From positions 144,146 to 208,145 of IMG/VR virus record IMGVR_UViG_3300020186_000013: a stretch of DNA of 64,000 nt; one strand, given 5' to 3'. Under the pieces are notes generated by a model. That model searched no databases and was not told where the DNA came from. It saw nothing but the letters and a program-made list of their open reading frames with translations. A program made the translations under genes and the position numbers. This document shows positions 1,646 to 46,932 of this stretch, piece after piece. How positions within the stretch are numbered: position 1 is the stretch's first letter; each line of letters opens with the position of its first letter.

Positions 1646-2743
1646 TTACGCGACCGGCTGTTGGTCCGCCGACGAGTGGGCGATCGGCTCCGGTGTGGCG
1701 AAGATCTCGGTCGGGGATTGGTTGAACTTGCGACGGTCGCGACGCTGGAGGGCCTTCTGCAAGACAGCCGAACGGCTTCGCTTCCGCATCTTGTCGTACA
1801 CGACGGCCCCAGTCAGCAGGCTCGACAGACCGGCGTACATGCCGTACCCGCCCATGGCCTGGCCGAGGACGTTAGAACTTCCCTGGCCGAGATAGTCGGA
1901 TAGAGCAGCCTGTTTCTCGACGAAAGCGTCATACAGCCGATCAAGGGCCTCGTCGAGGGCCTTCTTCTCGCCCCACTTGTGACCGCAAGAGTTGCACGCC
2001 CCGCTGTACGGGTCACCCTCCATGCTCGCACCGCATTTCGGGCAGTCCTCGCCCTTGAACGTGTGGTCGCCGGCAGACTTGGCCACGGCCTTGGGCTTGT
2101 CGTACTGCGATAGCAGAGCGTCGTGGAACTCCTGGCGGGCCGAATCGAGGGCCTGCTCGCGTTCCGTCTTGCGACGACTTTCCATCACCGCGTCGACGCC
2201 CTTCCAGCCGAGGCCCAGACCGCCAAGACCGCCGGCCAGCATCGACAGACCGTACCACGGGATGCCGCCCTTGGTCGTCGCGTCACCGCCGAGTAACCAC
2301 GGGACCGGGGTGGCCTCCTTGTCCATGGCTGCCTTCCTCTTCGGCACGTCCTCGTCTTCTTCCTCGGCCGGGATCGGCAGGGGCAGCATCGCCGACCCCG
2401 CCGTACTCCGTGCCCCGGCCATGTTCTGGCGAAGCATGTGGTGCAAGCCGACCGCCCCTCGGGCACCGGCCCCGACGCCGAGGCCGATCCCGAGGATCTT
2501 GCCGACGTCGCCCATCGCGGACTCCCGCAACGCCGTGTTCTTGGCCTCGCTTATGGCCTGGCTGATCACGAGCTGCTGGGGGGTCGGGGCCGAGCCAGTG
2601 AGCGAGTCCAAGGCCCCACGGCCCAGGTCGACGACGGGCTTGGCGGCGGCTCCGATGGCGTCGCCCACGGCCCCGAGGAAGCCCTCTTTTTGCATCTCCT
2701 CGCGGACCTTACTGAGCACCGACTGGCAGGTTAGGCTGTCCAT
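1646..2743 (-). CDS. Gly/Ala-rich K-x-A-motif protein with hydrophobic GxxxG helices and an inserted CxxC...CxxC Zn ribbon; putative virion internal protein
   Basis: 365-aa ORF; motifs MQKEG-FLGAVG, MDKEA, AKSAG, EKKA, EKQAA; glycine-zipper helices; CPKC...CNSC. Virion role is inference. Confidence 0.6.
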   Translation of the reverse strand: MDSLTCQSVLSKVREEMQKEGFLGAVGDAIGAAAKPVVDLGRGALDSLTGSAPTPQQLVISQAISEAKNTALRESAMGDVGKILGIGLGVGAGARGAVGLHHMLRQNMAGARSTAGSAMLPLPIPAEEEDEDVPKRKAAMDKEATPVPWLLGGDATTKGGIPWYGLSMLAGGLGGLGLGWKGVDAVMESRRKTEREQALDSARQEFHDALLSQYDKPKAVAKSAGDHTFKGEDCPKCGASMEGDPYSGACNSCGHKWGEKKALDEALDRLYDAFVEKQAALSDYLGQGSSNVLGQAMGGYGMYAGLSSLLTGAVVYDKMRKRSRSAVLQKALQRRDRRKFNQSPTEIFATPEPIAHSSADQQPVA

Positions 2744-3110
2744 TGACCAACTCCATTTGTCCGGCCGTCATGAACGGTGCCCGGTTACCGTCTTCCATGA
2801 AGTATTCGACCCACTCGACGTAGACCATTATCTGGGCGGCGTCGTACTGCCGCTTAATGTGGATGCACTGGAACCACCCGTTGGCGATCCCGTCGAGTAC
2901 CTCCAAATACTTCTTATTCTGGTCCGGGTCGGTCGTGTCGAAGTGACCGTTGTGAGGGTCGGCCACCTTGACGGTCTTGTCTTCCCACTCGTCTGAAGTA
3001 TACATCGGGGACGATTGGCCGCGAAACGGCATGCCGTCCTCGGTCGCCCGCCCCCAGTGCACCTTCTGGCCGTTGTGCTCCGTTCGGTTGCTGAACTTGA
3101 TCAGGCTCAT
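2709..3110 (-). CDS. Hypothetical protein (133 aa)
   Basis: ORF with coding-like codon usage in a continuous minus-strand run. Confidence 0.7.
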   Translation of the reverse strand: MSLIKFSNRTEHNGQKVHWGRATEDGMPFRGQSSPMYTSDEWEDKTVKVADPHNGHFDTTDPDQNKKYLEVLDGIANGWFQCIHIKRQYDAAQIMVYVEWVEYFMEDGNRAPFMTAGQMELVNGQPNLPVGAQ

Positions 3111-3119
3111 CTGACGTCC

Positions 3120-3512
3120 TTACAGGAACATCCGCCCGCCACGACTCTGCTTAGCCTGCTGCAACCGCCGAATCGCCTGCTGCCGGCGGACCTTGGCAGC
3201 TTCGGTACGGTAGGTGTCGATGACCTCGCGGTCCTTGATGTCGGCGACGTCCTTGTCGGTCACGTCCGTGGCCTTGGCCAAACCGGCCCCGGCGATGCCG
3301 CCCAGGATCGGCGGGGCGGCAAGGGCCAGAGGCACCCCGACGCTGCCGACGAGCTGCGTCAACGCCGTGGCGGCGTCACCGACGGCCCCGAACAACGCGA
3401 GCTTGTCCATCGCGGCCTTGACCGCCCCCGCCATTTGTTGGGCGGTCATCCCGTGCTCGACGCACCGGGCCACGAACCCGACCTTGAATGCTTCCCGTGC
3501 AGTCAGTGGCAT
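3120..3512 (-). CDS. Small K-x-A-motif protein with shared 'FVARC..HGMT.QQM..AV' leader and a glycine-rich hydrophobic helix
   Basis: AAGGAGG SD upstream; MPLTAREAFKVGFVARCVEHGMTAQQMAGAVKAAMDKLA-LFGAVG. Confidence 0.7.
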   Translation of the reverse strand: MPLTAREAFKVGFVARCVEHGMTAQQMAGAVKAAMDKLALFGAVGDAATALTQLVGSVGVPLALAAPPILGGIAGAGLAKATDVTDKDVADIKDREVIDTYRTEAAKVRRQQAIRRLQQAKQSRGGRMFL

Positions 3513-3560
3513 TTGGCCGTCCTCCTTGACAGCTAAGAAAAGGATCTCACCCCTGAATAG

Positions 3561-3758
3561 CTACCGGACCATCACGGGGCCGGCAGACACCGCACCGAAC
3601 AACACCAATCCCAGGATTAGCACGCAGAACCACGGGATCAGACAATAGACGCCAAAGTTCAGTCCGTTGAATGCGGCCCCTCGTGGTTCACGAAGCCTGC
3701 ACCCAGCAGGCAGCCAGAACATCATCAGTACGACCCAAATGATGACCCAAATCGTCAT
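3561..3758 (-). CDS. Small two-TM membrane protein
   Basis: AAGGA SD before ATG 3758; two hydrophobic stretches (IWVIIWVVLMMFW; CLIPWFCVLILGLVLFGAV). Confidence 0.65.
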   Translation of the reverse strand: MTIWVIIWVVLMMFWLPAGCRLREPRGAAFNGLNFGVYCLIPWFCVLILGLVLFGAVSAGPVMVR

Positions 3759-3781
3759 AGCGTTCCTTCGGAGCGGTAAGG

Positions 3782-4174
3782 TCACATGATCCCGTTTCCG
3801 CCGGAAACGCAGACCGTCGTCGGCTGCCGGCGACGGAGGTCGCGGCAGGCCGAAGCGTCGTCCGGCATGCCCTGCTCCTGGGCCTTCCGAGCGATGTACG
3901 CCGCTTTGTCGGTAATGTTCTGCATGTAGCTCTTGAGATCGGCGTCGGCACCACGACCGGGCGTGTCCGCCGAGTTACCAAGCATCTGGCTCAAGGCCAG
4001 CGTGTGCCGCAAGAACTCGCGAACGGACAGCGTCTCGTACGAGTTGTCGAGGGAGTCTTCGCAATGGATCAAGCCCCGGTCCGCCCAGAAGCGAACCGAG
4101 CGGTTGATGCCTTCCTTGGTCTTGCCCTGAATGATCAAGACGTCGTGACCGAAGGTGCCAATCTCGATGGTCAT
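3782..4174 (-). CDS. Hypothetical protein (130 aa)
   Basis: AGGAG SD; coding-like ORF. Confidence 0.7.
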   Translation of the reverse strand: MTIEIGTFGHDVLIIQGKTKEGINRSVRFWADRGLIHCEDSLDNSYETLSVREFLRHTLALSQMLGNSADTPGRGADADLKSYMQNITDKAAYIARKAQEQGMPDDASACRDLRRRQPTTVCVSGGNGIM

Positions 4175-4301
4175 CCCTGACTCCTAGAAACCAGAATCTA
4201 ACTCAGAACTCGCCCAGCAGGATCTTGCGACGGACGACCGGGTCGAGCGGCAGGAGTGCCAGACCGAACCCGGTGTCGATGATCTCGTAGTCCGCACCCC
4301 T

Positions 4302-5958: not shown

Positions 5959-8286
5959 CTACAGCTCACACTTGTCCCCGCTGCACGCATACGTCCGAGA
6001 ACCCGTGGTGGTGTCGACCTCCTCGTACCGTGGCAGCTTCGCCCAGTCGATGACCGGGAACTTCGCAGCCAGCTCGTTGTACTGCTCCTCGGTGACCACC
6101 TCGTTGGGAGCCGCCTTGTAGCTGCCGTTGTCCCACGGCAGGAAGGAGATGCCCGTAATCTCGTCGAAGTGCTCCCACACCCACGTGCCAACCGCAGGCC
6201 ACTCATGGTCCTTGACGTAGATCGTCACCGAGCAAGAGTGATCCGCCCAGTGCCGTTTCCACAGCAACCAGTTCTCCAGCTGCTGCATGGCCGTCACGTC
6301 TTCGCGGAGGGTGCAGCCCTCGGGGTTCTTCTTGATCCACGAGAACGCGACCAGGGACGGGTCTTCGGGGGCCACCTCCCACGGCACGCCCGACTCCTTG
6401 AGGAACTTGCACATCGGGGTGTGCATCGACTCGCGGGTCCGACGGATCTGGTGGCGACCGAACCGTGGCGACAGACCCGAGCCGCAGTCGAAGAACACGG
6501 CCGAGTCGCCGCTGGGCTTCACGGTGGTGTCGGCTGCCGACCGGTTGATGCCGAACCGTTTGGCCAGCATCTCGTTCGTCTCGGTCACGATCTGCTTGAG
6601 GGCCGTCAGCAGTTCCTCGCGACCGGGAGCACCCGGCTGGAGCAGCGGACAGTCCGCGTGGCCGGTGATGTCGACGCCGAGCAGCCGCTCCTCGTCGCAG
6701 TTCTTCTTCCAGTCCTTGCGGATGTACTGGAAGTTGGTGCAGCACGACTGGAGGGTGCCGAAGTAGGTCGCCGCCCGCACCTTCTCCATCAGCGTTTCCT
6801 TCGTGTCCTCCCGGCGGGCAACGGCGATCGAGAGGTTGCAGAACTGGAACGGCCGGAGCACGATTTCCGCACACGGGTTGCATCCGAACTTCCAGTTCTT
6901 GCGGCGGGCCGGGCGGTGTTTGCGGCACGCCTCGCGGTTGAAGATGCCCCGCTCCCCGGACTTCGACTTCACGAGGGCCAGCCACTCGTCCATGAAGTCC
7001 TCGACCGGGGGCTTCTCGTTGTACGCGGCCGAGTTGTTGGCCATCGACAGGAAATCCCGATCACGCCACCACTCGCCATGCTTGGCGTGCCGCATGTTGC
7101 GGCTGTTCAGGTCGGAGATGGAGATGCAGGACGCACGCCGTACGCCGCCCACCTGGACGATCTTGCCGATCATGCAGCAGATGCAGTGGACATCGTAATC
7201 CGACAGGCGGCGACCCTGAGCCGCCAAGATGACGCCACGCACGAACGTCAGGAGCTGGACGAGGGATTCCGGACCTGACGCCCGCCCACCCTTGGTAATC
7301 AGGCGTGTGCCCGCCTTCCGCACGTCGTTCGTGTCGAACTCCACGTCCTCGCCCGAGAACCACTTTGTGATCCCGAACAGCAAGGCGTCGCACCACCCCT
7401 CGGTGGAATCCTTGACCTTGTACTTGTACTTCTTGGCGTGCTTGCCCTTCCCCTGCCGCTTGACGCGGGGGAGATCGTCAACGTAGTCGGTCTCGACCGA
7501 GAAGCCGCCGCCGGTGCCCTGCATGAGGATGTAGAGCAACTCGGCAAACGAGAAGAGATCCTTGATCGGGTGGTAGGCACAGTTGTAGGCACCGACGTGG
7601 CACCGTTCGAGGGCAGGACCGGCCATCTGCACGACACGCATCGCGGGGCTGGACTTCAGCTCGAACATCATCTTGCGGAGCCAGACGACCTCCTCGGACT
7701 TGAGGTGGCCGAACTGCGGGATGGTGCCGAACCAGTCGAAGACGCGGTTGTTGCACTCTTGCCACGTCTCGCGGCGGTTGTCCTTCTCACGCCACCGGGA
7801 GAACTTGGAAAGGAACTGGTAATACTGGAGCGGGCTGGGGAAGTGCTGGGCGTCTTCGGTGATCGCCTCAGTAACGTGGGCCGGGATCGGCCGTTCCTCG
7901 CGAGTCTTACGACGCTCCTCGCGGTAAAGCGTGTAGTGCTCGGCAGCTTCGGCCAAGCCGTCCGCCCACAACTGAGTAATGACGGCCCGCTGCACCTCTT
8001 CGATCGTCATCGCCGACACGCTCTGGGCGGCGAAGTAATTCACGACTCTGACGGTGACGGCCTCGACCGTGTCGTGCGAGTCGTCAGGCGTGACGTTGAG
8101 TCCGTTTTGAAAGCAGCGGGTGACGGCGTGGCGAATCTTGGTACAGTCGAACGGCTCGGTGCGGCCGTCGCGTTTGGTGACCTTCCAGTCCTGGGACAAA
8201 ACTTCCGGGGTGAGCGTCTTGCCGTTAGCGTCCTGACGGCTCTGGTAATTACGACGCGACGACGCACTTGCAACGCCATGACTCAT
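5959..8286 (-). CDS. nrdJ: Class II (adenosylcobalamin-dependent) ribonucleotide reductase with N-terminal ATP cone
   Basis: VTKRDGRTEPFDCTKIRHAV ATP cone; GGVRRASCIS, GCNPCAEIVLRPFQFCNLS, TTVKPSG; C-terminal ACSGDKCEL CxxxxC; GGAGG SD before ATG 8286. Confidence 0.95.
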   Translation of the reverse strand: MSHGVASASSRRNYQSRQDANGKTLTPEVLSQDWKVTKRDGRTEPFDCTKIRHAVTRCFQNGLNVTPDDSHDTVEAVTVRVVNYFAAQSVSAMTIEEVQRAVITQLWADGLAEAAEHYTLYREERRKTREERPIPAHVTEAITEDAQHFPSPLQYYQFLSKFSRWREKDNRRETWQECNNRVFDWFGTIPQFGHLKSEEVVWLRKMMFELKSSPAMRVVQMAGPALERCHVGAYNCAYHPIKDLFSFAELLYILMQGTGGGFSVETDYVDDLPRVKRQGKGKHAKKYKYKVKDSTEGWCDALLFGITKWFSGEDVEFDTNDVRKAGTRLITKGGRASGPESLVQLLTFVRGVILAAQGRRLSDYDVHCICCMIGKIVQVGGVRRASCISISDLNSRNMRHAKHGEWWRDRDFLSMANNSAAYNEKPPVEDFMDEWLALVKSKSGERGIFNREACRKHRPARRKNWKFGCNPCAEIVLRPFQFCNLSIAVARREDTKETLMEKVRAATYFGTLQSCCTNFQYIRKDWKKNCDEERLLGVDITGHADCPLLQPGAPGREELLTALKQIVTETNEMLAKRFGINRSAADTTVKPSGDSAVFFDCGSGLSPRFGRHQIRRTRESMHTPMCKFLKESGVPWEVAPEDPSLVAFSWIKKNPEGCTLREDVTAMQQLENWLLWKRHWADHSCSVTIYVKDHEWPAVGTWVWEHFDEITGISFLPWDNGSYKAAPNEVVTEEQYNELAAKFPVIDWAKLPRYEEVDTTTGSRTYACSGDKCEL

Positions 8287-8385
8287 GGCATCTTCCTCCG
8301 ACAAATTGGGGATGGGAACAAAACACCAGTGCCGACCTGTCCCGCGATTCCTTCCGGACAGACCTACCGCACCCGCATCCTCGAC

Positions 8386-8838
8386 CTACTTCAGCCAGAC
8401 CGTACCCCGCACGGGGTCGACGGCGTATGACGCAGGTTCGTCGGGTGGCGGCAGGTTGAACACACGCAACAGAACGTGGTTCCCGGCGAACGACCCTTGG
8501 ATCAAGACCTCGGGACCGTCCATATCACCATTGTAGAGAGTGGGTGCAGACCAACCCACTTTCTCGACCACCGACATCGCCGACAAAATGCGGGTCACAT
8601 CGAGGCAAAAGCCGGACACGCAGCGGTGCCCGTCGTTGGCCCCGCCCCGCCATTCGTTGGGCGTGGGGAACACGGAAACCATCCAACCAGGAAACGAGTT
8701 ATGAGGGTTGGTCGGCTCCCACAGACGATACCCCAAGGGGCCGATAAAGCCCAGAGGGGTCATGGCTGAGAGGACGGTCTCGACCAGGGCGTCCACCCAC
8801 TTGGGGGGCTCGCAGGTGTGGATCTCGAACACACTCAC
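8386..8838 (-). CDS. Hypothetical protein (150 aa)
   Basis: Coding-like ORF. Confidence 0.7.
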   Translation of the reverse strand: MSVFEIHTCEPPKWVDALVETVLSAMTPLGFIGPLGYRLWEPTNPHNSFPGWMVSVFPTPNEWRGGANDGHRCVSGFCLDVTRILSAMSVVEKVGWSAPTLYNGDMDGPEVLIQGSFAGNHVLLRVFNLPPPDEPASYAVDPVRGTVWLK

Positions 8839-8851
8839 GGCGTACTCACGG

Positions 8852-10372
8852 TTACTCGGAGCTTCCCTGCCCCTGGACTTTTTGTTTCTTGTGCCTACGG
8901 GCCGTACTCAAAATCGACGGACCGAACTCACCAAGTCGGACACCGTTGAACGCCCGGTTGTCCCAGTACACATCGGCCATGACCTTGCCGCTGGAACCAG
9001 GAGGCTGGTCGGGGTTCTCGTTGATGTGGTCAAAGGGGATGCCATGCTCCTCCATCCACGTCTCGATCAACTTCGGGTTGTTGCGAACCGTGAAGATGAT
9101 AATCCGAACGCCCGCTTCGTGTAAGAGCTTCATCCACTTCTTCGCCCCGCGACGGGGCAGACCGATGAAGTCCGGGTCATGCGGCTGCTTCTCCTCGGCC
9201 AGCGTCCCGTCGAGGTCAACGGCCACCGAGAACCGGCGTTCCTTGTAGTCGGCAGCCGTCTTGTCGGCGTAGTGGTTGATGACCTTGACGGACGGATCAG
9301 ACCGCCACCGGGGAAGGTACGCCTTGTAGATCTGAGTGCCGACCTTGGCCTTGGCCACCCGCTGCTTCCGCCACTCAAGCTCGTCGAGGCCCATGGCCTT
9401 CGGGTTGTACTTGCTACTCGACCGGTCGCGGGTCAATCGCTGCTCGACGAGGCGATCAAGCGGCGTGTCGATGAGGTGCCGCTCGTGGGCCTTGCGCAAC
9501 TCAGGATCACCGTGCATGAGCTGCACGCCCTCAATGATCGACGGCACCTTGGCCTTCCGGATCGCATCCTCAACGAGCTTGCGGTTGTTCAAGCGACGCA
9601 TGGCGTTCTTCTCTTCGGGGTCGAGGTGAGACACCTCCATGCCCTTCCACTGCTTCCACAACGGGTGGGCGTCGAGTGATACATGAGGCATCTTGTTTTC
9701 GCCCGACAACTTCTTGGCGTAGGTCGTCTTGCCTGCCCCCGAGAAACCTGTGACGAGGATGTGCTTCAAAGCTGGCGGCAGCCCCTTCAGGTGCTTGAGC
9801 ACCTCCATACGCTTCGCGTTCGCTGCCACCAGCGTCGGACTCAGGCCGTCCTGCTTCGACATGGCCATGGCTTCGTCAATGTCGTAAAGTCCCACGCCCT
9901 TGCGGGACACCGGCTCAACCAGCTTGTTACCGTGGGGCTCGCCCAGATCGCCGACGAAGTAGTGCGTCCGGGAACCCCGGTAGGTCTTGGCCCGCTCGGC
10001 CTGCTTTTTTCCGCTGTAGGGCGGCGACCAGTCCAACTCGTGCGGGTCGAATGGAAGAGGTCGGGGGTTGTGGACGTGGTATCCGCTTTCTTCCGCGAAC
10101 TCGCGGACCGCAGCCGTCGCCGGGTCTTCACCAGGGTCGATGCCGCCACCGAACGTCAGGAAGTTGCCAGCGTCAGCGAGACCCCCGAAGATTTTGCCGT
10201 CCTTCATGGCAAACATCTCGGCACGATCGCGGTACGGCTTCGGGTTGCTTTCTTGCGTGACGCCAGGCAGACTGGTACTCAGAGCCGCCAACGCAGCCTT
10301 CGTCAGGCTGAGGCGGTCTTCCGGGACCCGTGGGGCCAGAATCCGCAAGATCGGATCTTCGGACTCAAACAT
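8852..10372 (-). CDS. Nudix hydrolase - P-loop kinase - HAD phosphatase triple fusion (C-terminal two-thirds is PNKP-like in architecture)
   Basis: Nudix box GGGIDPGEDPATAAVREFAEESG; Walker A GFSGAGKT; HAD motif I VAVDLDGTLA, FTVR, and ADVYWDNRA. Confidence 0.85.
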   Translation of the reverse strand: MFESEDPILRILAPRVPEDRLSLTKAALAALSTSLPGVTQESNPKPYRDRAEMFAMKDGKIFGGLADAGNFLTFGGGIDPGEDPATAAVREFAEESGYHVHNPRPLPFDPHELDWSPPYSGKKQAERAKTYRGSRTHYFVGDLGEPHGNKLVEPVSRKGVGLYDIDEAMAMSKQDGLSPTLVAANAKRMEVLKHLKGLPPALKHILVTGFSGAGKTTYAKKLSGENKMPHVSLDAHPLWKQWKGMEVSHLDPEEKNAMRRLNNRKLVEDAIRKAKVPSIIEGVQLMHGDPELRKAHERHLIDTPLDRLVEQRLTRDRSSSKYNPKAMGLDELEWRKQRVAKAKVGTQIYKAYLPRWRSDPSVKVINHYADKTAADYKERRFSVAVDLDGTLAEEKQPHDPDFIGLPRRGAKKWMKLLHEAGVRIIIFTVRNNPKLIETWMEEHGIPFDHINENPDQPPGSSGKVMADVYWDNRAFNGVRLGEFGPSILSTARRHKKQKVQGQGSSE

Positions 10373-10443: not shown

Positions 10444-10638
10444 ATGCTCGTACTTTCACGCAAGGCCGGCGAGAAGATCCACATTGGCGACAACATCGTG
10501 TTGACCATCGTCGAGGTTCGCGGCAACAAGGTTCGCCTCGGCCTCGTGGCCCCGGCCGACGTTGCCGTGCACCGCGAAGAGGTCTTCGAGGCGATCAAGG
10601 CGTCGCAGGCGAACGCAGAGGTCGCGGCCCGGAGCTAG
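10444..10638 (+). CDS. csrA: Carbon storage regulator CsrA/RsmA
   Basis: MLVLSRKAGEKIHIGDNIVLTIVEVRGNKVRLGLVAPADVAVHREEV is a canonical CsrA sequence; AAGGAG SD. Confidence 0.95.
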   Translation: MLVLSRKAGEKIHIGDNIVLTIVEVRGNKVRLGLVAPADVAVHREEVFEAIKASQANAEVAARS

Positions 10639-11186
10639 TCCGAGTCCGCCTTGCGGGTGCCGTTGCGACCGAGAACGCCGCGACGGCGAACCGCACACGT
10701 GATGTGGAAGTCGTACTCGCCCCCTTTGGGGCGAGACGACAGCCCGTAAGACCGCCGCAGCTTCTGAAGTTCCGGTGAGTGGATCGTTGTAAACCACACC
10801 TTCTCCACGCCCGGCCACCCGTCAGGCTCCACTTCCTTCAGCCTCCCCAGCGTGTACGTGAACTGCTTGCCACGCTCCGTGATCTTGTCGACGCCGCCGA
10901 TCTCCTCGACCTCTTCCTTGCGGATGACCGAGATGTGAGCGTTGAACGGCTGGTCGCCGTGGCCCGGCGGCAACTCGACGCCCGGCTCCCTCATAGACTT
11001 GAAGATGCCTCGCACCATGGCGTTGGGCACGGTGAGCATGATCCAGCCGCCGGGCGTCGCGTAGAGCGTCCCCGCCAGGTTGTACACCGGGACAGGGACA
11101 CCAGCCTCCTTGACAAACCGCTGGCCCAGGATGAAAGCAACCCGCTGGTGCACAGCGGGGCCGTTCGACACAGATAGCAGCGACAC
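10635..11186 (-). CDS. 2H phosphoesterase-family protein
   Basis: Two H-x-S/T motifs (AHISVI, FHITCA) about 85 aa apart; N-terminal leader ends in FVKEAG. Confidence 0.7.
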   Translation of the reverse strand: MSLLSVSNGPAVHQRVAFILGQRFVKEAGVPVPVYNLAGTLYATPGGWIMLTVPNAMVRGIFKSMREPGVELPPGHGDQPFNAHISVIRKEEVEEIGGVDKITERGKQFTYTLGRLKEVEPDGWPGVEKVWFTTIHSPELQKLRRSYGLSSRPKGGEYDFHITCAVRRRGVLGRNGTRKADSD

Positions 11187-12216: not shown

Positions 12217-12426
12217 TTAGCCGTTAATGTCGTCGAGCGGCTTACCCTCTATGGCTCGGTTGTAGCCCCGACGCCACGCTCCGCGACGTTGCCGTTGTAC
12301 GCCCTGGCCGATCTTGTACGGTTGATCGTTACGACCGGCCAGGGCGTCTTCGTACCCTCGACGGTAGCACGAGAAGAGATGCTTCTGCCAGCGAAACTTG
12401 GCGTCGCGTGGGTGTACCTTGGACAT
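12217..12426 (-). CDS. Ribosome modulation factor (Rmf)-like protein
   Basis: YRRGYEDALAGR..QPY.....QRRGAWRRGY resembles the Rmf pattern RGYQAG..GR...CPY....R..WLGGW. Confidence 0.55.
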   Translation of the reverse strand: MSKVHPRDAKFRWQKHLFSCYRRGYEDALAGRNDQPYKIGQGVQRQRRGAWRRGYNRAIEGKPLDDING

Positions 12427-12930: not shown

Positions 12931-14721
12931 TCAGTCGTCTTCTTTTTTCAGTTTGATGATCTTACGCGGCAGTCGCTCCATCTTCTTGTGGAACGCCTCA
13001 CGGGCCTTTTCCTTCCGCTCTTCGATCGCCTTCTTGTGGGCCTTATCGCTCATCGCCTCCTTGAGTGACTCCGACAACGGGGCCGCGACCGGGGTGACGC
13101 TGCTGCCGCCGACGTACTGCTGGGGCGTGGCCACGTGGGTGACCTTGATGGGGGTCGTCGAGAAGACCACATTCGCCAGGAAGGACGTCAGCAGGACAGA
13201 CGAGTGCTCGCTCAGTGGGGCCTTCTCGTCGAGGAAGTCCCGGAAGTTCTTGCCGATCTCCTCGACGACCTGTTCCGCTTCGTAGTGGGTCTTGCCCGGC
13301 ACCACGCAGCACCGCGTCAACTGAGCCAGGTACGCAAAGTTCTTCTTGAGCAGCGGCAGCAGGAAGGCCACCTGAGCCCGGATCTTGTCGTAAGTGTCGA
13401 GCTGCTCGGCCACCTTCTTCGCTGCCTCAATGATCTTGGCAGGGTCCTCAGACGGCGGCGGACCCTTGGGCAGCGTCCGCGTCTCGGGCACCCCCGCGAA
13501 CAGGAACGCCATCAGATCGTCCGGCATGTCGGCCTTGTCGATCAGCTTCTCGGCAAAGCGCTTCTTAATCCACGGCGACACGATGAACTTCTCCGGCGGC
13601 TTGACCGTGGTCATCGTCACCGGCTTGGCGGGCGGGTTCTTCAACTCCTCCGTGCTCTTGGCGTGCGTCTTCGACATCGTCAGAGCCTCGGTCAGCGTGA
13701 CGCCCATGGTCGAGCAAATGGCACTGAGGTGCTTCTTCTCTTCATCGGTCAACGCGGCAATGGTCGCCGCGACGAGTCCGCCCATGTCCGCAGGCACGTG
13801 GTACGAGGACGGGATCACAGGCCCCAGTGCGATCTCGGGCTCCTCGGTGCTCGGGGGCAGCTTCAGCTTGTTCTTCTCGGCCCACTTCTGGACCTCGGTG
13901 CTAAACTTGACGGGCGTGACCTGGTTGTGGGCACCCGGCACCAGCCGCATCAGCTGGTCGGTCATGATGACCAGGTTGTACTCCAGGGACTGCTTCTCCT
14001 TGGGCGTCTCGGCCTTGTCGCGTGCCGAGTACAGCTTGGCGATGCCGTCTTGCAGATACTTCTGCTTCTTGGCCCGAGCTTCGAGGGACATGTCGACGAC
14101 GGCTTGCGGCTCCTTGCCAGCCTTGCGACTGGTCAGCTCGACCGTGAACGCCGCTGCCCACTCCTGGTTGACGCGACAGCCGCACGGGTTGAGAGTGTAC
14201 GTAAGAACCGGAATCTGCTCGATCATCGGCGACCCGGAGTCGATGTCGATCTGCCCGTTGGGCAGGGGGTACGCCTCCTTGCCGCCGTCGAGACAGCGGA
14301 CACGCTGGCAGCAACTCGGGCAAGTAATGTGGGGCTTCTGGGCCAACGCCTTCTCGTCGGCGATCGAATCAAACAGCATGTGGTCTGGCCTCTTCCCGCC
14401 GACGTACCTCTTTTTGACCCCGCCCTCCCTGTGTGGGTCATTCCCAGGTCCCGACCGGCCGGAGTAGATGTCTTCGCGGTCGTCCAGCCCGCCGGTCGCT
14501 TTGGCCCCGTAGCCAACGTCCTGCTTCATGGCGGTGGGCGATTCACTAGGTACTATTGTAAGTTCGTGACTTGCTTTCTGGCACTCCATGCCCCCGGCGA
14601 CGGCGAGGAGGTAGGAGTCGTAGGCGTCATCGGCGGGCTTCCTGCCCTCGGTCACCGTCGCGATCTTGGCGAGCATGGACGCCCGGAGATTCTGGAACTT
14701 GGCGGCGGACTGTGAAAGCAT
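12931..14721 (-). CDS. Hypothetical protein (~596 aa) with Cys cluster
   Basis: GGAGG SD before ATG 14721; CPSCCQRVRC...PCGC. Confidence 0.75.
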   Translation of the reverse strand: MLSQSAAKFQNLRASMLAKIATVTEGRKPADDAYDSYLLAVAGGMECQKASHELTIVPSESPTAMKQDVGYGAKATGGLDDREDIYSGRSGPGNDPHREGGVKKRYVGGKRPDHMLFDSIADEKALAQKPHITCPSCCQRVRCLDGGKEAYPLPNGQIDIDSGSPMIEQIPVLTYTLNPCGCRVNQEWAAAFTVELTSRKAGKEPQAVVDMSLEARAKKQKYLQDGIAKLYSARDKAETPKEKQSLEYNLVIMTDQLMRLVPGAHNQVTPVKFSTEVQKWAEKNKLKLPPSTEEPEIALGPVIPSSYHVPADMGGLVAATIAALTDEEKKHLSAICSTMGVTLTEALTMSKTHAKSTEELKNPPAKPVTMTTVKPPEKFIVSPWIKKRFAEKLIDKADMPDDLMAFLFAGVPETRTLPKGPPPSEDPAKIIEAAKKVAEQLDTYDKIRAQVAFLLPLLKKNFAYLAQLTRCCVVPGKTHYEAEQVVEEIGKNFRDFLDEKAPLSEHSSVLLTSFLANVVFSTTPIKVTHVATPQQYVGGSSVTPVAAPLSESLKEAMSDKAHKKAIEERKEKAREAFHKKMERLPRKIIKLKKEDD

Positions 14722-14776
14722 GAGGGGCCTCCCTTTCGGTGGCCCCTCAGTTAGAAACCAGCTTCTAGGAGCCGCG

Positions 14777-15163
14777 TCACTCCACCTTATCGTCTTCGTC
14801 ATCCTGCGTCAGGGCCAACATGGGGATGATCGCCATCGCGAGCTGGAAGAAGATCTTGATGATCGCCATGATCCCGTCCTTGTGGGCAGCCCACCACGTG
14901 GCCAGACGACCCTTGCCGGTCGGAGGCGGGGGCACCTCCTCCAGCATCTTGAGCAGCTGTGGCTGCTTGGCGATCTCCGCGTTGGCCGCTTCGTCCGTCG
15001 CCTGGGCCACGGCCCGCCGAGCCTGCCGTCGGGAGATCTGCTCTTTCTCGACGAGGTCATTGACGGCCCCACGTCGACCCATCAGCATCAGAATGCCGCG
15101 AGCCGGGGCACCGGGTACGTCCAGGAGGTTCAGGGCCATCGGGTCTGCTTCTTCCACGATCAC
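14777..15163 (-). CDS. Hypothetical protein with C-terminal hydrophobic helix
   Basis: GIMAIIKIFFQLAMAIIPML followed by an acidic tail. Confidence 0.7.
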   Translation of the reverse strand: MIVEEADPMALNLLDVPGAPARGILMLMGRRGAVNDLVEKEQISRRQARRAVAQATDEAANAEIAKQPQLLKMLEEVPPPPTGKGRLATWWAAHKDGIMAIIKIFFQLAMAIIPMLALTQDDEDDKVE

Positions 15164-15648
15164 TCCTTGGTTGCGGTAAAGTGCTCTTCGAGTGCAGCCT
15201 TAGCGGCTGCCTCCTGCTGATCGACCTCGGCGAGGGCGGCGACGAACCGCTCCTCGTACTGTTCCTGACGGACGATCTTAGTGTCGACCATGAGTTTGAC
15301 GAGGGCAAGGATGTTGGCGGACGTCGACCGGTAGTGGTCCTTGAGCCGCTTGACCTCGTCGCGGGTCAGGGCCTGTTCGTCGGCAACCGGCTCGTCGGTC
15401 TTGCCCACAGGGACGTTGGCGGCTTGCAAGAGTCGGAGGGCGTCAGCGACGTACGAGTAGCAGCCGATCATCTTGACGACGCCGGTCTTGGCGTCCTTGA
15501 GCGGATAGGACGCAGCCAGACACGGGTAGTGCTGTGGGCCGTTGCCCCAGCCCACCGCGTGGGGGTCGACGCCGACGCCCGAGGCCAACGTCTTGCGGTA
15601 GTTGTCCCAGTCGTCGGCGTTGTTCAGGAGCGTCCAGTTCGTCGCCAT
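15160..15648 (-). CDS. Hypothetical protein (162 aa)
   Basis: Coding-like ORF with stop/start overlap to its neighbour. Confidence 0.7.
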   Translation of the reverse strand: MATNWTLLNNADDWDNYRKTLASGVGVDPHAVGWGNGPQHYPCLAASYPLKDAKTGVVKMIGCYSYVADALRLLQAANVPVGKTDEPVADEQALTRDEVKRLKDHYRSTSANILALVKLMVDTKIVRQEQYEERFVAALAEVDQQEAAAKAALEEHFTATKE

Positions 15649-15649
15649 C

Positions 15650-15877
15650 TCATACCTTCTGGTTTCGCACAGCCCACGCGGCGATGCCCGCCTTGGTGAG
15701 GCTCAGCTTCTTGCGGACGCGGGCGGCGTACGTGCGGACAGTTTCGTACCCAAGGTCCAGCTCGTCAGCGATGTGCTGGTAAGTCTTCCCTTCGGCGATC
15801 CCTCGCACCACGGCCAGCTCGCGATCCGACAGTTCCTTGTCGGAAGCCACATCGTTCTCCAATAGAGCTGCCATCAT
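15650..15877 (-). CDS. Stand-alone LuxR/GerE-type HTH regulator
   Basis: LSDRELAVVRGIAEGKTYQHIADELDLGYETVRTYAARVRKKL; ATGA coupling to the upstream GT gene. Confidence 0.85.
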   Translation of the reverse strand: MMAALLENDVASDKELSDRELAVVRGIAEGKTYQHIADELDLGYETVRTYAARVRKKLSLTKAGIAAWAVRNQKV

Positions 15878-16761
15878 TGGGAAAGTAACTCCGTAACCCG
15901 CTCCACCTTGTCGTTCGGCTCGCCGACCGGGTAAAGGTCGTCGGGCCACGGCCGGTTCGGGGACGCCTCGTAGGCGATGGCGTCGGAACCGCTGATGGTG
16001 AGTGTGGGTGCATCCCAACGGTAATGAAATGCGAGGAGTTCGTCAATCTTGGCCTTACGGTCTGAGGCCATGATCCAGTCCCGCTTCCGGGCGTTGGGGG
16101 CAGCCGTTGCGATCTGCCGGTGCTGCTCATACCCGCGACCGTTGTCGCCCCGGACGCCGACGATGTGGTGGAACGGCAAACCAGGCACCGTCGCCAGGCG
16201 GACCCGGCTTTCGCCCAGCTTCCGCACCAGGTCGACCAGAGGCTGCTCGCGGTTGCTGTACGAGACCTCGGGCCACAGTTCCCTGCGGCCCATGAGCGTC
16301 GAGATGGCCCCCCGCTCCTCGGGGTGACCGGTGGGGTTCTGGTAGTTGACGAAGAACAGCTCGTGCGAGTCATAGAAGTAGTAGAGGCTGTCCTCCAACA
16401 TCGTCATCGCCTCGGGTACGGTCAGCTGCCGCTTCATCTGGTCCCGGAGACGGTACTCGTGGTTCTGGTTGTCGTCGTCCCAGATCGCCAGGTACTCGCC
16501 GTAGGACATCGCCATCGCGTGCACGACGCCCTCGCACCCGACTCGGACCGATCGCTTATAGACACGGATCTTCACGTCGTGGGGGAGGTTCATGTACATC
16601 CACGACCGAATACCGTCCACGTAGGAGGCGTCGTTGGCGACGATCACCAACTCCTTGTTGGCATAGGACTGACCCTGGAAGTTCAGGATCGCCCGCTGGA
16701 GCAAGCCCCAGCGGTCGGGCTTGCTGACGCACATGCAGCTCACAAGAGGCTCGTCGGACAT
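15874..16761 (-). CDS. Glycosyltransferase, GT2-like
   Basis: PLVSCMCVS...AILNFQGQSYANKELVIVAND...GEYLAIWDDD. Confidence 0.8.
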   Translation of the reverse strand: MSDEPLVSCMCVSKPDRWGLLQRAILNFQGQSYANKELVIVANDASYVDGIRSWMYMNLPHDVKIRVYKRSVRVGCEGVVHAMAMSYGEYLAIWDDDNQNHEYRLRDQMKRQLTVPEAMTMLEDSLYYFYDSHELFFVNYQNPTGHPEERGAISTLMGRRELWPEVSYSNREQPLVDLVRKLGESRVRLATVPGLPFHHIVGVRGDNGRGYEQHRQIATAAPNARKRDWIMASDRKAKIDELLAFHYRWDAPTLTISGSDAIAYEASPNRPWPDDLYPVGEPNDKVERVTELLSQ

Positions 16762-16770
16762 GTCCACTCC

Positions 16771-17355
16771 CTATGCGACCCCGCTGACGACCAGCGAGTC
16801 GGCCATGTGTTTCGTCTCTTCACTCTCCCGGAGGTCCAGGGCTTCGATGGAGTTGACCCGAACCATGCGGGAATTGCGAGAGCACTTTGTCCAGTTCGCC
16901 GTCCGGTGAGCAATGATCCCGTCGACCCGAACGTCCACGTCACAAAGGTCGAACTTGCTGACCCCCATGTCGACGTACGCCTGCTTACGGAGCGTGGTAA
17001 CGGCGAGGTCCACCTTGGTGTGCTTCAAGTGCTCCAGACACTCCTCGGCCCGGATCAGGTCCATGAACGGCGTGCAGGCGTTGATGAGGACGGCCGATGC
17101 GTGCTTGCCTTGGCGGGCATGGCCGGCCAAGATCTCGTCCCACTTCGAGTCGTCCTTCTCAGGGAGGGAGACGAACAGGTTGGCGTCGAGGAGTTCCTGG
17201 CACTGGGGGAGGTACTTCTCGAACGTCACGCAGGCGACGCGGCCAACGCCACGGACCTCGGAGATCTTCTTGAAAACTCTCTCCACGACAGGGAGGGAGC
17301 CGAGCCAGGTGAAGACGACGGGGTCAAGGGCAAGGACGCAGGCGAGGGTCGACAT
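16771..17355 (-). CDS. Divergent acylneuraminate cytidylyltransferase (NeuA)-like protein
   Basis: VLINACTPF...AEECLEHL...DLAVT and RVNSIEALDL resemble NeuA LQPTSP...ai.ll...dsvvs and DIDT..D; the N-terminal PARGGSK motif is absent. Confidence 0.4.
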   Translation of the reverse strand: MSTLACVLALDPVVFTWLGSLPVVERVFKKISEVRGVGRVACVTFEKYLPQCQELLDANLFVSLPEKDDSKWDEILAGHARQGKHASAVLINACTPFMDLIRAEECLEHLKHTKVDLAVTTLRKQAYVDMGVSKFDLCDVDVRVDGIIAHRTANWTKCSRNSRMVRVNSIEALDLRESEETKHMADSLVVSGVA

Positions 17356-17357
17356 TA

Positions 17358-18014
17358 TTACTCCATTGATTTCGGGGGAGGTGGTCGCGGTCGGGGCGGC
17401 TTACTTTCTTTAGGCCGATCCCGTTCGCGTCGCTCGATTTTGCCGTTCACGTGGTAGACGGTCGAGGCCCCGTCTTCGTTCAACACAACAAGTCTGTCTG
17501 CGGCGGTGAAGGTGATGACCAGGCCCTTGGGAATGTCTACAACGCCGTCGTCGAGTACCACCAGTTGGCCCAGCCCCTCCTTCTGCGTGACGACCGGCGT
17601 CGACGAGCGTCGCAACCGCTCCCCGATCCGTTTGTTCAGTTCTCTCTCGTCGGGCAAGGCGGCTTGCGTGCGGTCAACCAACTCCTGTCGGCCGTCGGGG
17701 CCGTCGAGGTAACTGGTCCCATCGGGGTTGACGACAACGGAGTAGCCCGGTGCCCCCGCGATCAGGGTGCGGCGAGGCTGAGGTTTCAAATCGTCCCGGA
17801 CTTCCCGTGGCATTGACGCCACGGGCAAGGACAGGGCGAAGGGTGCGGTGGTTCGAGGCTCGGGAATCCGTTCCCTCGGTGGCTGTCGCGGCTCGGGCGT
17901 CCGTTCGGCGTCGGGCAACCCCACGACCAGTAGGGTGACCATCCCGCCGAGACCGCCCGAGATCAGCACGCCGCAGAAAAGAACGGTCCAGAGGTTGGAC
18001 CGTTTACGCCTCAT
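17358..18014 (-). CDS. Membrane-anchored hypothetical protein
   Basis: N-terminal TM (LWTVLFCGVLISGGLGGMVTLLVVGL) followed by a Pro-rich linker. Confidence 0.7.
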   Translation of the reverse strand: MRRKRSNLWTVLFCGVLISGGLGGMVTLLVVGLPDAERTPEPRQPPRERIPEPRTTAPFALSLPVASMPREVRDDLKPQPRRTLIAGAPGYSVVVNPDGTSYLDGPDGRQELVDRTQAALPDERELNKRIGERLRRSSTPVVTQKEGLGQLVVLDDGVVDIPKGLVITFTAADRLVVLNEDGASTVYHVNGKIERRERDRPKESKPPRPRPPPPKSME

Positions 18015-46924: not shown

Positions 46925-46932
46925 GTCCGTCC

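What the first reader, a model, noticed from the sequence alone, without database searches (positions are those of the whole stretch)
8852..10372. Nudix + P-loop kinase + HAD phosphatase triple fusion punctuated by K-x-A sites
Seen: a short leader ending LTKAA, then a Nudix box, Walker A GFSGAGKT, then DKTAA exactly between the kinase and the DLDGT HAD domain. Established: kinase+HAD is the architecture of T4 polynucleotide kinase/phosphatase (PseT), which repairs RNA cut by host anticodon nucleases; Nudix enzymes remove nucleotide caps or signals. Inference: an RNA end-healing or nucleotide-signal-destroying polyprotein that may be packaged, cleaved and injected.
Basis: partly seen in the sequence, partly recalled or inferred. 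Interest (0 to 1): 0.6.

Follow-up and report, generated by a model that had tools for sequence, protein, structure and literature searches.

The report
Modular phage enzyme cargo with cut-site junctions
An uncultured jumbo phage encodes one protein made of three phosphate-handling enzymes (Nudix, kinase, phosphatase), joined at a short Lys-x-Ala motif that also marks this phage lineage's head proteins, so it is probably packed into the capsid, cut apart and injected with the DNA.

Summary
Window 8852-10372 (minus strand) is one 506-aa ORF in a 208-kb phage from microbial mats. It reads: leader ending LTKAA, canonical Nudix box, P-loop kinase (GFSGAGKT), DKTAAD junction, capless HAD phosphatase (DLDGT).

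The K-x-A sites are not significant in this protein alone (4 seen, 3.6 expected). They are strongly conserved by position in relatives: K.AA[DE] occurs 69 times against 4.7 expected, and K-x-A lies just upstream of 62-100% of module starts against a 24% background.

The gene sits in a conserved slot (2H-SAK, CsrA, this gene, ~150-aa protein, RNR) where related phages carry different module sets and orders.

The same motif is concentrated in the head-protein block of this phage, and of its nearest cultured relative, Salmonella phage Arash, including the capsid protein's N-terminus. One relative is a portal-HAD fusion. Packaging and cleavage are therefore well supported indirectly, but not shown.

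The T4 PseT analogy is only partly supported. The domain order matches, but the kinase resembles shikimate/gluconate kinases, the HAD is BT0820-type, and no sealing ligase was detected.

Verdict: a new variant of the known "polyvalent / Swiss-Army-knife" phage proteins.

The parts
8852..10372 (-). Whole ORF, 506 aa (P0001): leader, Nudix, kinase, junction, HAD, basic tail
10292..10372 (-). N-terminal leader, residues 1-27, ending LTKAA (site 1 at 10292-10306). A divergent form of the leader M-x-[DE]-F-[DE]-x-L-x-x-[LF]-x-[VP]-P...K-phi-A-[DAG] found in 33 of 88 relatives
   Evidence: 76% identical in P0003, where it is joined directly to the kinase
9782..10237 (-). Nudix hydrolase module, residues 46-197; Nudix box at 10079-10147
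   Evidence: Pfam NUDIX 3.6e-8. Profile against PDB: Ap4A hydrolase 5.8e-8, RppH 7e-7. Foldseek top hits RppH, Ap4A hydrolase and NudC. pLDDT above 90
9278..9766 (-). P-loop kinase module, residues 203-365; Walker A at 9725-9748. Near-invariant Asp234 (LD), E281-G282, R312 and R315
   Evidence: Model pLDDT 93. VIA Z 11.9-10.8 to shikimate kinase, gluconokinase and uridine kinase. 584 distant relatives, mostly inside long multidomain proteins
9248..9265 (-). Junction motif DKTAAD, residues 370-375 (site 2), in a low-confidence linker between kinase and HAD
   Evidence: Codons vary synonymously between phages
8933..9229 (-). Capless HAD phosphatase module, residues 382-480. Motif I DLDGT at 9203-9217; motif II T428/R430; motif III K463; motif IV D471
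   Evidence: phrog_1238 6.6e-21. NCBIfam BT0820 family 3.4e-10 and HAD-IIIA 7e-6. PDB 2obb 9.5e-12, 1xpj 2.4e-9, Pnkp1 2.6e-4. Invariant columns
8855..8932 (-). C-terminal helix and basic tail, residues 481-506
10635..11186 (-). Upstream neighbour: stand-alone 2H-SAK phosphoesterase with its own leader ending FVKEAG. The same domain is fused to HAD, InPase or Nudix modules in relatives
   Evidence: Pfam PF22547 1.1e-12. Fusions in P0074, P0027, P0086, P0087, P0090. Syntenic in L006 and L007
4736..5875 (-). Conserved 379-aa neighbour of unknown fold with N-terminal K-x-A-A sites (VVKTAAP, VKQAAA), kept in two related phages
   Evidence: No family or PDB match
8386..8838 (-). Conserved ~150-aa downstream neighbour, unknown function (part of the syntenic frame)

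Best explanation
The ORF is one allele of a hypervariable 'polyvalent' (Swiss-Army-knife-type) cargo gene in a lineage of jumbo phages that package their own RNA polymerase. It strings together three catalytically intact enzymes: an RppH/Ap4A-hydrolase-like Nudix pyrophosphohydrolase; a P-loop kinase of the hydroxyl-phosphorylating shikimate/gluconate-kinase fold; and a capless HAD-IIIA phosphatase. An N-terminal leader and an inter-module junction each carry a Lys-x-Ala(-Ala/Gly) motif. The same motif marks the head-block proteins and the capsid protein's N-terminus in this lineage. I infer that it is the recognition site of the head-maturation protease. On that reading the leader addresses the protein to the prohead, the protease removes the leader and frees the HAD from the Nudix-kinase unit (no site separates Nudix from kinase here), and the enzymes enter the host with the DNA. 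I further infer that, together with the neighbouring 2H phosphoesterase, they remodel phosphate termini of RNA or nucleotide-derived molecules at the start of infection: 5'-ppp or capped ends to 5'-p (Nudix), 5'-OH to 5'-p (kinase), 3'-P to 3'-OH (HAD), and 2',3'-cyclic phosphate opening (2H). Shown: the domain identities and intact motifs, the module shuffling in a fixed genomic slot, and the positional conservation and head-block concentration of the motif. Inferred: cleavage, packaging and substrates.
For: Domains and catalytic motifs. Independent shuffling and reordering of the three modules with InPase, GNAT, 2H-SAK, LigD 3'-phosphoesterase, ligase OB, SNF2 and PAP2 partners. Fixed slot (2H-SAK, antisense CsrA, variable gene, ~150 aa, RNR, ~380 aa) in three phages, with backbone and modules equally diverged (45-60% identity). 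Junction motif: 69 against 4.7 expected; specific to Lys and not Arg; upstream of 62-100% of module starts. Synonymous codon variation shows selection on the peptide. Low pLDDT at the junction. Shared leader before different first domains. Packaging: P0089 is a phage portal (PF04860, 1.2e-20) with this HAD at its C-terminus; InPase-portal fusions and predicted virion packaging of InPase/NUDIX/GNAT polyvalent proteins are described in PMC5512222. Head link: K.AA occurs at 5.2 per 1000 aa in the head block g123 and g128-g134 against 0.68 elsewhere (p=6e-12). That block is syntenic with Arash Gp218-226, which virion MS detected. In Arash there are 13 hits in 2,845 aa of that block against 38 in about 53,500 aa elsewhere (p=2e-7), and the other multi-hit proteins are annotated structural. 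K-x-A aligns in the same column near residue 30 of the two capsid proteins, and at the N-terminus of g129/Gp222. Arash virion preparations contain RNAP, RNA ligases, pyrophosphatases, a phosphoesterase and a dNMP kinase. Precedent for short P3-x-P1 motifs and N-terminal propeptides in giant-phage heads: SPN3US AXE (PMC10052503).
Against: No protease gene was identified (Pfam S77 and S78 searches of the genome were empty), and no proteomic evidence of cleavage exists. The gene lies among early/metabolic-type genes (RNR, CsrA, RMF-like), not in the structural block. The first site (LTKAAL) lies in a predicted helix of moderate confidence and lacks the D/E that follows most junction sites. The leader HMM found no other carrier in this genome. 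Arash itself has no detectable homologue of this protein, and its authors caution that enzymes seen in virion preparations may be carry-over. Substrates are unknown: the kinase is not specifically Pnk-like, and no Rnl2, RtcB or ATP-dependent DNA ligase was detected, so a self-contained heal-and-seal pathway is not evident.
Confidence: 0.5

Rival explanations
1. Anti-defence nucleotide scavenger. The modules, whether or not cleaved and packaged, destroy host immune or stress nucleotides (cyclic oligonucleotides, ADP-ribose derivatives, Np4N, alarmones, NAD-derived signals) and do not act on RNA ends.
For: The Nudix module is nearest to Ap4A hydrolase, NudC and ADP-ribose pyrophosphatase as much as to RppH. 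The module pool is dominated by small-molecule phosphoesterases: InPase, inorganic pyrophosphatase, PAP2, and 2H with a weak Acb1 match. The kinase fold matches small-molecule kinases. No ligase was detected. Rapid module turnover in one slot is typical of arms-race genes. PMC5512222 proposes nucleotide-signal targeting for InPase/NUDIX polyvalent proteins.
Against: The capless HAD, and fusions of this HAD to a ligase OB domain and of the Nudix to a LigD 3'-phosphoesterase, point to polymer ends. phrog_505 'polynucleotide kinase' spans kinase plus HAD. A kinase has no obvious role in signal destruction.
Confidence: 0.3
2. Uncleaved cytoplasmic trifunctional enzyme. K-x-A-A is a structural linker, helix cap or docking element (or a tag for a host factor), not a protease site, and the protein works intact after early expression.
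For: No protease was found. The gene neighbourhood is non-structural. The first site sits in a predicted helix. The phi-phi-V-K-R-A form could be a beta-strand leading into the HAD fold.
Against: The motif precedes at least five unrelated folds (HAD, Nudix, kinase, InPase, 2H) and also occurs at the N-termini of the capsid protein and head-block proteins. The strict preference for Lys over Arg and the head-block concentration in two 30%-identical phages are hard to explain as a generic linker. The junction has low model confidence.
Confidence: 0.2
3. Nucleotide-pool housekeeping next to RNR: a MutT-like sanitiser, an NMP or nucleoside kinase and a nucleotidase that balance dNTP supply for replication.
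For: The gene is adjacent to a class II RNR in all three phages. The kinase has weak matches to adenylate, cytidylate, uridine and deoxynucleoside kinases. MutT models hit weakly.
Against: Housekeeping enzymes are not expected to shuffle with GNAT, 2H, SNF2, ligase and portal partners, nor to carry leaders and junction motifs shared with head proteins. The kinase's near-invariant Asp after the P-loop fits hydroxyl kinases better than NMP kinases (inference from the known shikimate kinase and T4 Pnk mechanisms, recalled from memory).
Confidence: 0.1

Closest known systems
Polyvalent proteins of phages and conjugative elements (Iyer, Burroughs, Anand, de Souza, Aravind 2017; PMC5512222)
   Same: Multi-enzyme polypeptides with highly variable domain combinations. 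The phage-type set includes InPase, NUDIX, GNAT and 2H. They are predicted to be packaged and delivered with the DNA, and portal fusions are known. Relatives of this ORF carry exactly those domains.
   Different: In the passages retrieved with my search terms, that paper proposes processing by embedded peptidase domains (MPTase). My term search of it found no HAD module ('had' occurred only as the ordinary word), no 'linker' and no Lys-x-Ala junction or common leader; I did not read the whole text. Here there is no embedded peptidase, and there is a short conserved junction/leader motif shared with head proteins.
'Swiss Army Knife' (SAK) RNA-repair proteins (source of the Pfam 2H-SAK / HAD_SAK names; Burroughs & Aravind 2016, recalled from memory, paper not held)
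   Same: Phage proteins that combine kinase, HAD, 2H and other end-processing domains. The neighbour gene and several fused relatives match Pfam 2H-SAK.
   Different: The HAD here did not match the HAD_SAK models at E<=1 and is BT0820-like. No ligase partner was found in the genome.
T4 polynucleotide kinase/phosphatase (PseT/Pnkp) and bacterial Pnkp1
   Same: N-terminal P-loop kinase followed by a C-terminal DxDGT phosphatase. phrog_505 spans both. Gordonia phage Bantam 'polynucleotide kinase' aligns over residues 199-463 at 26% identity. Pnkp1 phosphatase 2.6e-4.
   Different: The kinase is closer to shikimate/gluconate kinases, with T4 Pnk not in the top 50 fold matches. A Nudix module is attached. 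The kinase and HAD are independent modules separated by a conserved junction. No sealing ligase was detected.
Prohead-protease processing and capsid-targeting propeptides in T4, phiKZ and SPN3US
   Same: A short three-residue motif (T4 L/I-x-E and phiKZ S/A/G-x-E from memory; SPN3US A-x-E), N-terminal propeptides, many cleaved internal and ejection proteins, and virion RNAP.
   Different: The motif here would be Lys-x-Ala followed by Ala or Gly, resembling herpesvirus assemblin V/L-x-A|S (from memory) more than the glutamate motifs. The protease is unidentified and cleavage has not been shown.
BT0820 family HAD phosphatases (PDB 2obb; 1xpj)
   Same: Small capless HAD with all four motifs; best sequence match.
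   Different: The score is far below the NCBIfam equivalog cut-off (40 against 165 bits). Here the domain is a phage module fused to many different partners.

Membership tests
Nudix hydrolase superfamily | Nudix box G-x5-E-x7-R-E-U-x-E-E-x-G-U | tested here: met
   Residues 76-98 match exactly. Pfam NUDIX 33.9 bits against a cut-off of 21.1. REx2EE invariant in 25 relatives.
RppH / Ap4A-hydrolase subgroup of Nudix | Closest sequence and fold relatives; N-terminal (G/P)YR motif; aromatic residue 16-18 positions after the box | tested here: inconclusive
   Top profile hits are Ap4A hydrolase 5.8e-8 and RppH 7e-7, aligned from the PYRxR motif. Foldseek top hits are RppH and Ap4A hydrolase, but NudC and ADPRase score almost the same. 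Trp at +17 (sequence). NCBIfam RppH models score far below cut-off.
T4 Pnkp (PseT) family | Kinase domain N-terminal to a DxDxT phosphatase in one polypeptide | tested here: met
   Kinase 203-365, HAD 382-480. phrog_505 aligns residues 204-457.
T4 Pnkp (PseT) family | Kinase domain belongs to the polynucleotide 5'-kinase clade | tested here: inconclusive
   Profile against PDB and two fold searches rank shikimate, gluconate, uridine and adenylate kinases first, and T4 Pnk is not in the top 50-60. A near-invariant Asp 19 residues after the P-loop Lys is compatible with a hydroxyl kinase.
T4 Pnkp (PseT) family | Phosphatase domain of the PNKP type | tested here: inconclusive
   Pfam HAD_PNKP 13.4 bits against a cut-off of 27.6. 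Pnkp1 2.6e-4, mammalian PNKP 0.24, T4 5uj0 0.55. BT0820 family is the best match.
T4-type RNA heal-and-seal pathway | A partner RNA ligase encoded by the same genome | tested here: not met
   No PF09414 or PF01139 (RtcB) match, and no PF01068 (DNA ligase) match in the 93%-complete genome. The PF09511 search had no positive control.
HAD superfamily, capless IIIA / BT0820-like | Motifs I-IV (DxDGT; T/S; K; D/DD) and no cap domain | tested here: met
   Invariant D386, D388, T390, T428, K463 and D471 in 70 sequences. About 100-aa domain. HAD-IIIA 7e-6 and BT0820 3.4e-10, but below the equivalog cut-off. 2obb 9.5e-12.
Polyvalent proteins (PMC5512222) | Two or more unrelated effector domains in variable combinations, encoded by a phage, with hallmark domains such as InPase, NUDIX and GNAT | tested here: met
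Polyvalent proteins (PMC5512222) | Delivered into the host with the DNA (virion-packaged) | not testable with these tools
   Indirect only: the portal-HAD fusion P0089, and the motif shared with head proteins.
[quoted passage not shown] | Pfam SAK-type domains (2H-SAK, HAD_SAK) | tested here: inconclusive
   2H-SAK is present in the neighbour gene (1.1e-12) and in fused relatives. There was no HAD_SAK hit in this ORF at E<=1.
Substrates of a head-maturation protease | A short motif enriched in head proteins, present at the capsid protein N-terminus and after N-terminal leaders | tested here: met
   this phage and Arash; leaders.
Substrates of a head-maturation protease | An identified protease and demonstrated cleavage | tested here: not met
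   No S77 or S78 match. Cleavage itself cannot be tested with these tools.

The most novel reading that the evidence does not exclude
Lys-x-Ala followed by Ala or Gly is the cleavage code of a so far unidentified maturation protease in a deep, mostly uncultured lineage of RNAP-packaging jumbo phages (phage Arash is the nearest cultured member). The lineage has used this code, plus a short N-terminal address peptide, to build an evolvable 'beads-on-a-string' cargo gene: enzyme modules can be swapped in and out of one genomic slot, and each is released as a separate injected enzyme. If so, the injected proteome of these phages could be read directly from sequence.
Probability: 0.4. Interest if true: 0.75.

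Novelty: new variant of a known kind. Interest (0 to 1): 0.62.

Why it matters
Polyvalent phage proteins are thought to be first-strike weapons delivered with the DNA, but how they are addressed to the capsid and separated into working units is largely unknown. A simple sequence code shared by capsid, internal head proteins and a shuffling enzyme cassette would give a testable rule for predicting injected proteins in uncultured jumbo phages. It would also provide a portable targeting-and-release tag for loading cargo into capsids. Finally, it points to a concentrated pool of candidate counter-defence or RNA-end-remodelling enzymes (Nudix, kinase, HAD, 2H, InPase) to assay. Phage Arash is cultured and already has virion proteomics, so the cleavage rule is directly testable.

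Tried and rejected
- **Head genes by family models.** PHROGs and Pfam on 30 candidate proteins found none. Pfam Peptidase_S77, Peptidase_S78, Phage_capsid and Gp23 found nothing in the whole genome. tblastn of g130, g133 and g134 against cultured phages gave nothing useful. The two Atlas look-ups (g130, g132) returned only low-score leads for poorly structured proteins. The capsid and portal genes were finally found by BLAST against annotated Arash proteins.
- **g129/Gp222 as the protease.** This was considered but could not be tested: no PDB, Pfam or NCBIfam match.
- **Leader HMM.** An HMM of the N-terminal leader found no other carrier in this genome, and did not even recover this ORF's own divergent leader.
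- **Kinase word searches.** The kinase module alone found nothing, and the region search found only four proteins. I therefore used the exhaustive profile search once.
- **First composite alignment.** It was misaligned and was discarded.
- **Burroughs & Aravind 2016.** The paper is not held in the library; what I say about it is from memory.
- **DNA-level conservation of the junction (recombination hotspot).** Rejected, because the codons differ synonymously.
- **Generic Ala-rich linker.** Rejected, because R.AA shows no excess.
- **Arash homologue.** None was detected.
Full report
**1. What is there.**
The window is the last 64 kb of a 208,145-bp IMG/VR virus record (93% complete). Nine microbial-mat metagenome runs hold the gene.

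Positions 8852-10372 on the minus strand form a single 506-aa ORF.
- LTKAA at residues 23-27
- a textbook Nudix box at 76-98
- Walker A GFSGAGKT at 209-216
- DKTAAD at 370-375
- HAD motif I DLDGT at 386-390

Pfam and PHROGs confirm three domains.

**2. The three modules.**
- **Nudix (46-197).** A 25-sequence profile hits Ap4A hydrolase (5.8e-8) and RppH (7e-7), aligned from the N-terminal PYRxR motif. Foldseek on the AF2 model puts RppH, Ap4A hydrolase and NudC on top, with ADP-ribose pyrophosphatases close behind. It is a catalytically intact Nudix of the RppH/Ap4A-hydrolase kind, but the substrate is not resolved.
- **Kinase (203-365).** It is rare. Word searches found only five or six relatives, so I used the exhaustive profile search. 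That returned 584 relatives, mostly embedded in proteins of 300-2,400 aa alongside NUDIX, InPase, 2H-SAK, PAP2, LNS2/HAD and further kinase copies. With the deep alignment the domain folds at pLDDT 93. Sequence and structure place it with shikimate, gluconate and uridine kinases (VIA Z 11.9-10.8). T4 Pnk is not in the top 50. A near-invariant Asp 19 residues after the P-loop lysine, plus two lid arginines, fit a hydroxyl-phosphorylating kinase. That last step is inference from the known shikimate kinase and T4 Pnk mechanisms, recalled from memory.
- **HAD (382-480).** It is a ~100-residue capless HAD with all four motifs invariant in 70 relatives. The nearest matches are the BT0820 family (NCBIfam 3.4e-10; PDB 2obb 9.5e-12, 1xpj), then HAD-IIIA, then the Pnkp1 phosphatase (2.6e-4).

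**3. Modules shuffle in one fixed genomic slot.**
BLAST mapping of 89 relatives shows that the three modules occur independently and in different orders: kinase-Nudix-HAD in P0004; HAD-Nudix in P0025; leader-kinase-HAD, with a clean loss of the Nudix, in P0003. Partners include GNAT, InPase, 2H-SAK, a LigD 3'-phosphoesterase, a ligase OB domain, an SNF2 helicase, a weak C39-like peptidase match, and a phage portal protein.

In two related jumbo-phage contigs the neighbourhood is the same: 2H-SAK, CsrA on the opposite strand, the variable gene, a ~150-aa protein, class II RNR, a ~380-aa protein, and further on RNAP beta. Yet the variable gene reads leader-X-kinase-Nudix-Zn ribbon in one contig and GNAT-InPase-Nudix-Zn ribbon-HAD in the other. 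Backbone genes and shared modules are equally diverged, at 45-60% identity. So the slot is inherited vertically while its contents are rearranged.

The upstream neighbour in the window (10635-11186, minus strand) is a stand-alone 2H-SAK phosphoesterase (1.1e-12). The same domain is fused to these modules in other phages.

**4. The K-x-A sites.**
In this protein alone they are not significant: 4 observed against 3.6 expected. Across relatives they are.
- K.AA[DE] occurs 69 times against 4.7+-2.2 in shuffles. R.AA shows no excess.
- K-x-A lies 4-30 residues upstream of the start of HAD (62/82), InPase (28/32), Nudix (16/26) and kinase (5/5) modules, against a 24% background. A frequent extended form is phi-phi-V-K-R-A-A-D-D.
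- The distant kinase-bearing proteins show the same signature, for example EKTSSAKE and QKTAAADP just before the P-loop strand.
- Codons at the motif differ synonymously between phages, so the peptide is what is selected.
- The DKTAAD junction has low model confidence.

Thirty-three of 88 relatives also share an N-terminal leader (M-x-[DE]-F-[DE]-x-L-x-x-[LF]-x-[VP]-P ... K-phi-A-[D/A/G]) ahead of different first domains. This ORF has a divergent copy of it. The neighbouring 2H-SAK (FVKEAG) and the ~380-aa protein (VVKTAAP) have their own leaders of this type, conserved in all three phages.

**5. Link to the head.**
The phage encodes split multisubunit RNAP subunits. Its nearest cultured relative is Salmonella phage Arash, at 31% identity in beta'. 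Arash virion MS detected 116 proteins, including RNAP beta and beta', RNRs, two RNA ligases, pyrophosphatases, a phosphoesterase and a dNMP kinase. The authors caution that some of these may be carry-over (PMC10585845).

BLAST against Arash proteins identifies this phage's capsid protein (g125, 1.5e-36), its portal (window 61061-63010, 3.6e-62) and the virion protein Gp222 (g129, 7.6e-33). NCBIfam gives weak independent support for the capsid call.

The K.AA-rich genes g123 and g128-g134 form the block between the RNAP genes and the capsid gene. That block is syntenic with Arash Gp218-225. The motif rate is 5.2 per 1000 aa there against 0.68 elsewhere (p=6e-12).

Arash shows no genome-wide excess (51 against about 40 expected). 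But 13 hits fall in the 2,845 aa of Gp218-226 (p=2e-7), one of them at residue 27 of the capsid protein. There are none in the portal, the 1,525-aa RNAP beta, the helicase or the major tail protein. The other multi-hit proteins are annotated structural.

K-x-A aligns in the same column in the two capsid proteins (about residue 30), and also in g129/Gp222 just before the conserved core.

P0089, a portal with this HAD at its C-terminus, places the module inside a capsid in at least one phage.

**6. Interpretation.**
The most economical reading is that K-x-A followed by A or G is the recognition motif of this lineage's head-maturation protease. This would be analogous to the A-x-E motif and N-terminal propeptides mapped in SPN3US (PMC10052503), and to T4 capsid-targeting sequences. 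On that reading the ORF is a head-targeted cargo polyprotein, cut into a leader, a Nudix-kinase unit and a free HAD.

This is inference. No protease was found and cleavage is untested.

Function is less certain. Three things favour phosphate-end remodelling of RNA or DNA: the capless HAD, the ligase and LigD-phosphoesterase fusions, and the 2H neighbour. Three things keep destruction of nucleotide signals a serious rival: no detectable ligase, the small-molecule-like kinase fold, and the InPase/PAP2/Acb1-like partners. A variant worth testing is that Nudix and kinase stay fused because both generate 5'-monophosphate RNA ends, which would promote decay of host RNA. This is my own inference, from memory of published work on RppH and T4 Pnk.

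**7. Comparison and novelty.**

Not mentioned in the passages of PMC5512222 that my term search returned, and new as far as I could check:
- the conserved Lys-x-Ala junction and leader grammar
- its sharing with capsid and head-block proteins
- the single hypervariable slot in a conserved jumbo-phage backbone

I did not read that paper in full, and the 2016 paper was not available, so this novelty claim is limited. Membership in the T4 PseT family is not established. I rate the finding a new variant of a known kind, with interest about 0.6.

No alternative genetic code was used. Read laying was not called. The costly exhaustive search was used once, only after the word searches left the kinase open.

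Noticed in passing
window 10444-10638 (+): A phage-encoded CsrA homologue (Pfam CsrA 2.2e-24) lies antisense in the gap between the 2H-SAK gene and the cargo gene, overlapping the 2H-SAK stop by 4 bp. The same arrangement is kept in two related phages (L006, L007).
   Followed up: partly
window 12217-12426 (-): A 69-aa ORF has a weak match to ribosome modulation factor (Pfam RMF 2e-5, 25 bits, just under the 27.9 cut-off). Together with CsrA it suggests a translation-takeover cluster.
   Followed up: no
window 5959-8304 (-); L006 12284-17767: A class II (B12-type) ribonucleotide reductase with an ATP-cone. In the related contig L006 the orthologue is 1,827 aa and is interrupted by two intein/LAGLIDADG insertions.
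   Followed up: no
G000 124596-126104 (L002 6596-8104, -), outside the window: g129, the orthologue of Arash virion protein Gp222, has a strongly conserved core (YGxNRNGDxFxE ... HxNKD) and a four-Cys CxxPxDxCSxCGN...YC motif. It has no family or PDB match. It lies between the portal/RNAP genes and the capsid gene, and is a candidate for the missing maturation protease or scaffold.
   Followed up: partly
window 61061-63010 (-); G000 120895-121833: The portal (orthologue of Arash Gp204, 3.6e-62) and the 312-aa HK97-fold major capsid protein (orthologue of Gp226, 1.5e-36) are invisible to Pfam and PHROGs and were found only through Arash.
   Followed up: yes
G000 140507-145772 (partly window 1-1627, -): RNAP beta is split into two genes (g140 1,038 aa plus g139 582 aa), where Arash has one 1,525-aa Gp206, the most abundant protein in the Arash virion MS.
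   Followed up: partly
G000 2152-4269 and 14079-17552, outside the window: A ThyX gene carries Hint and LAGLIDADG (intein) matches, and a 1,157-aa protein fuses a uracil-DNA-glycosylase domain to a family A DNA polymerase.
   Followed up: no
P0085 (relative, 701 aa): One relative combines a 2H (LigT/Acb1-like) domain, this HAD and a weak Peptidase_C39-like domain. This hints that some members may carry their own processing peptidase.
   Followed up: no
window 39992-41269 (-) and 41657-46936 (-): A head-decoration-like virion protein (phrog_2647, 2e-36) with an FTKLAAA site at residue 99 lies next to a 1,759-aa ORF that has no family match.
   Followed up: no
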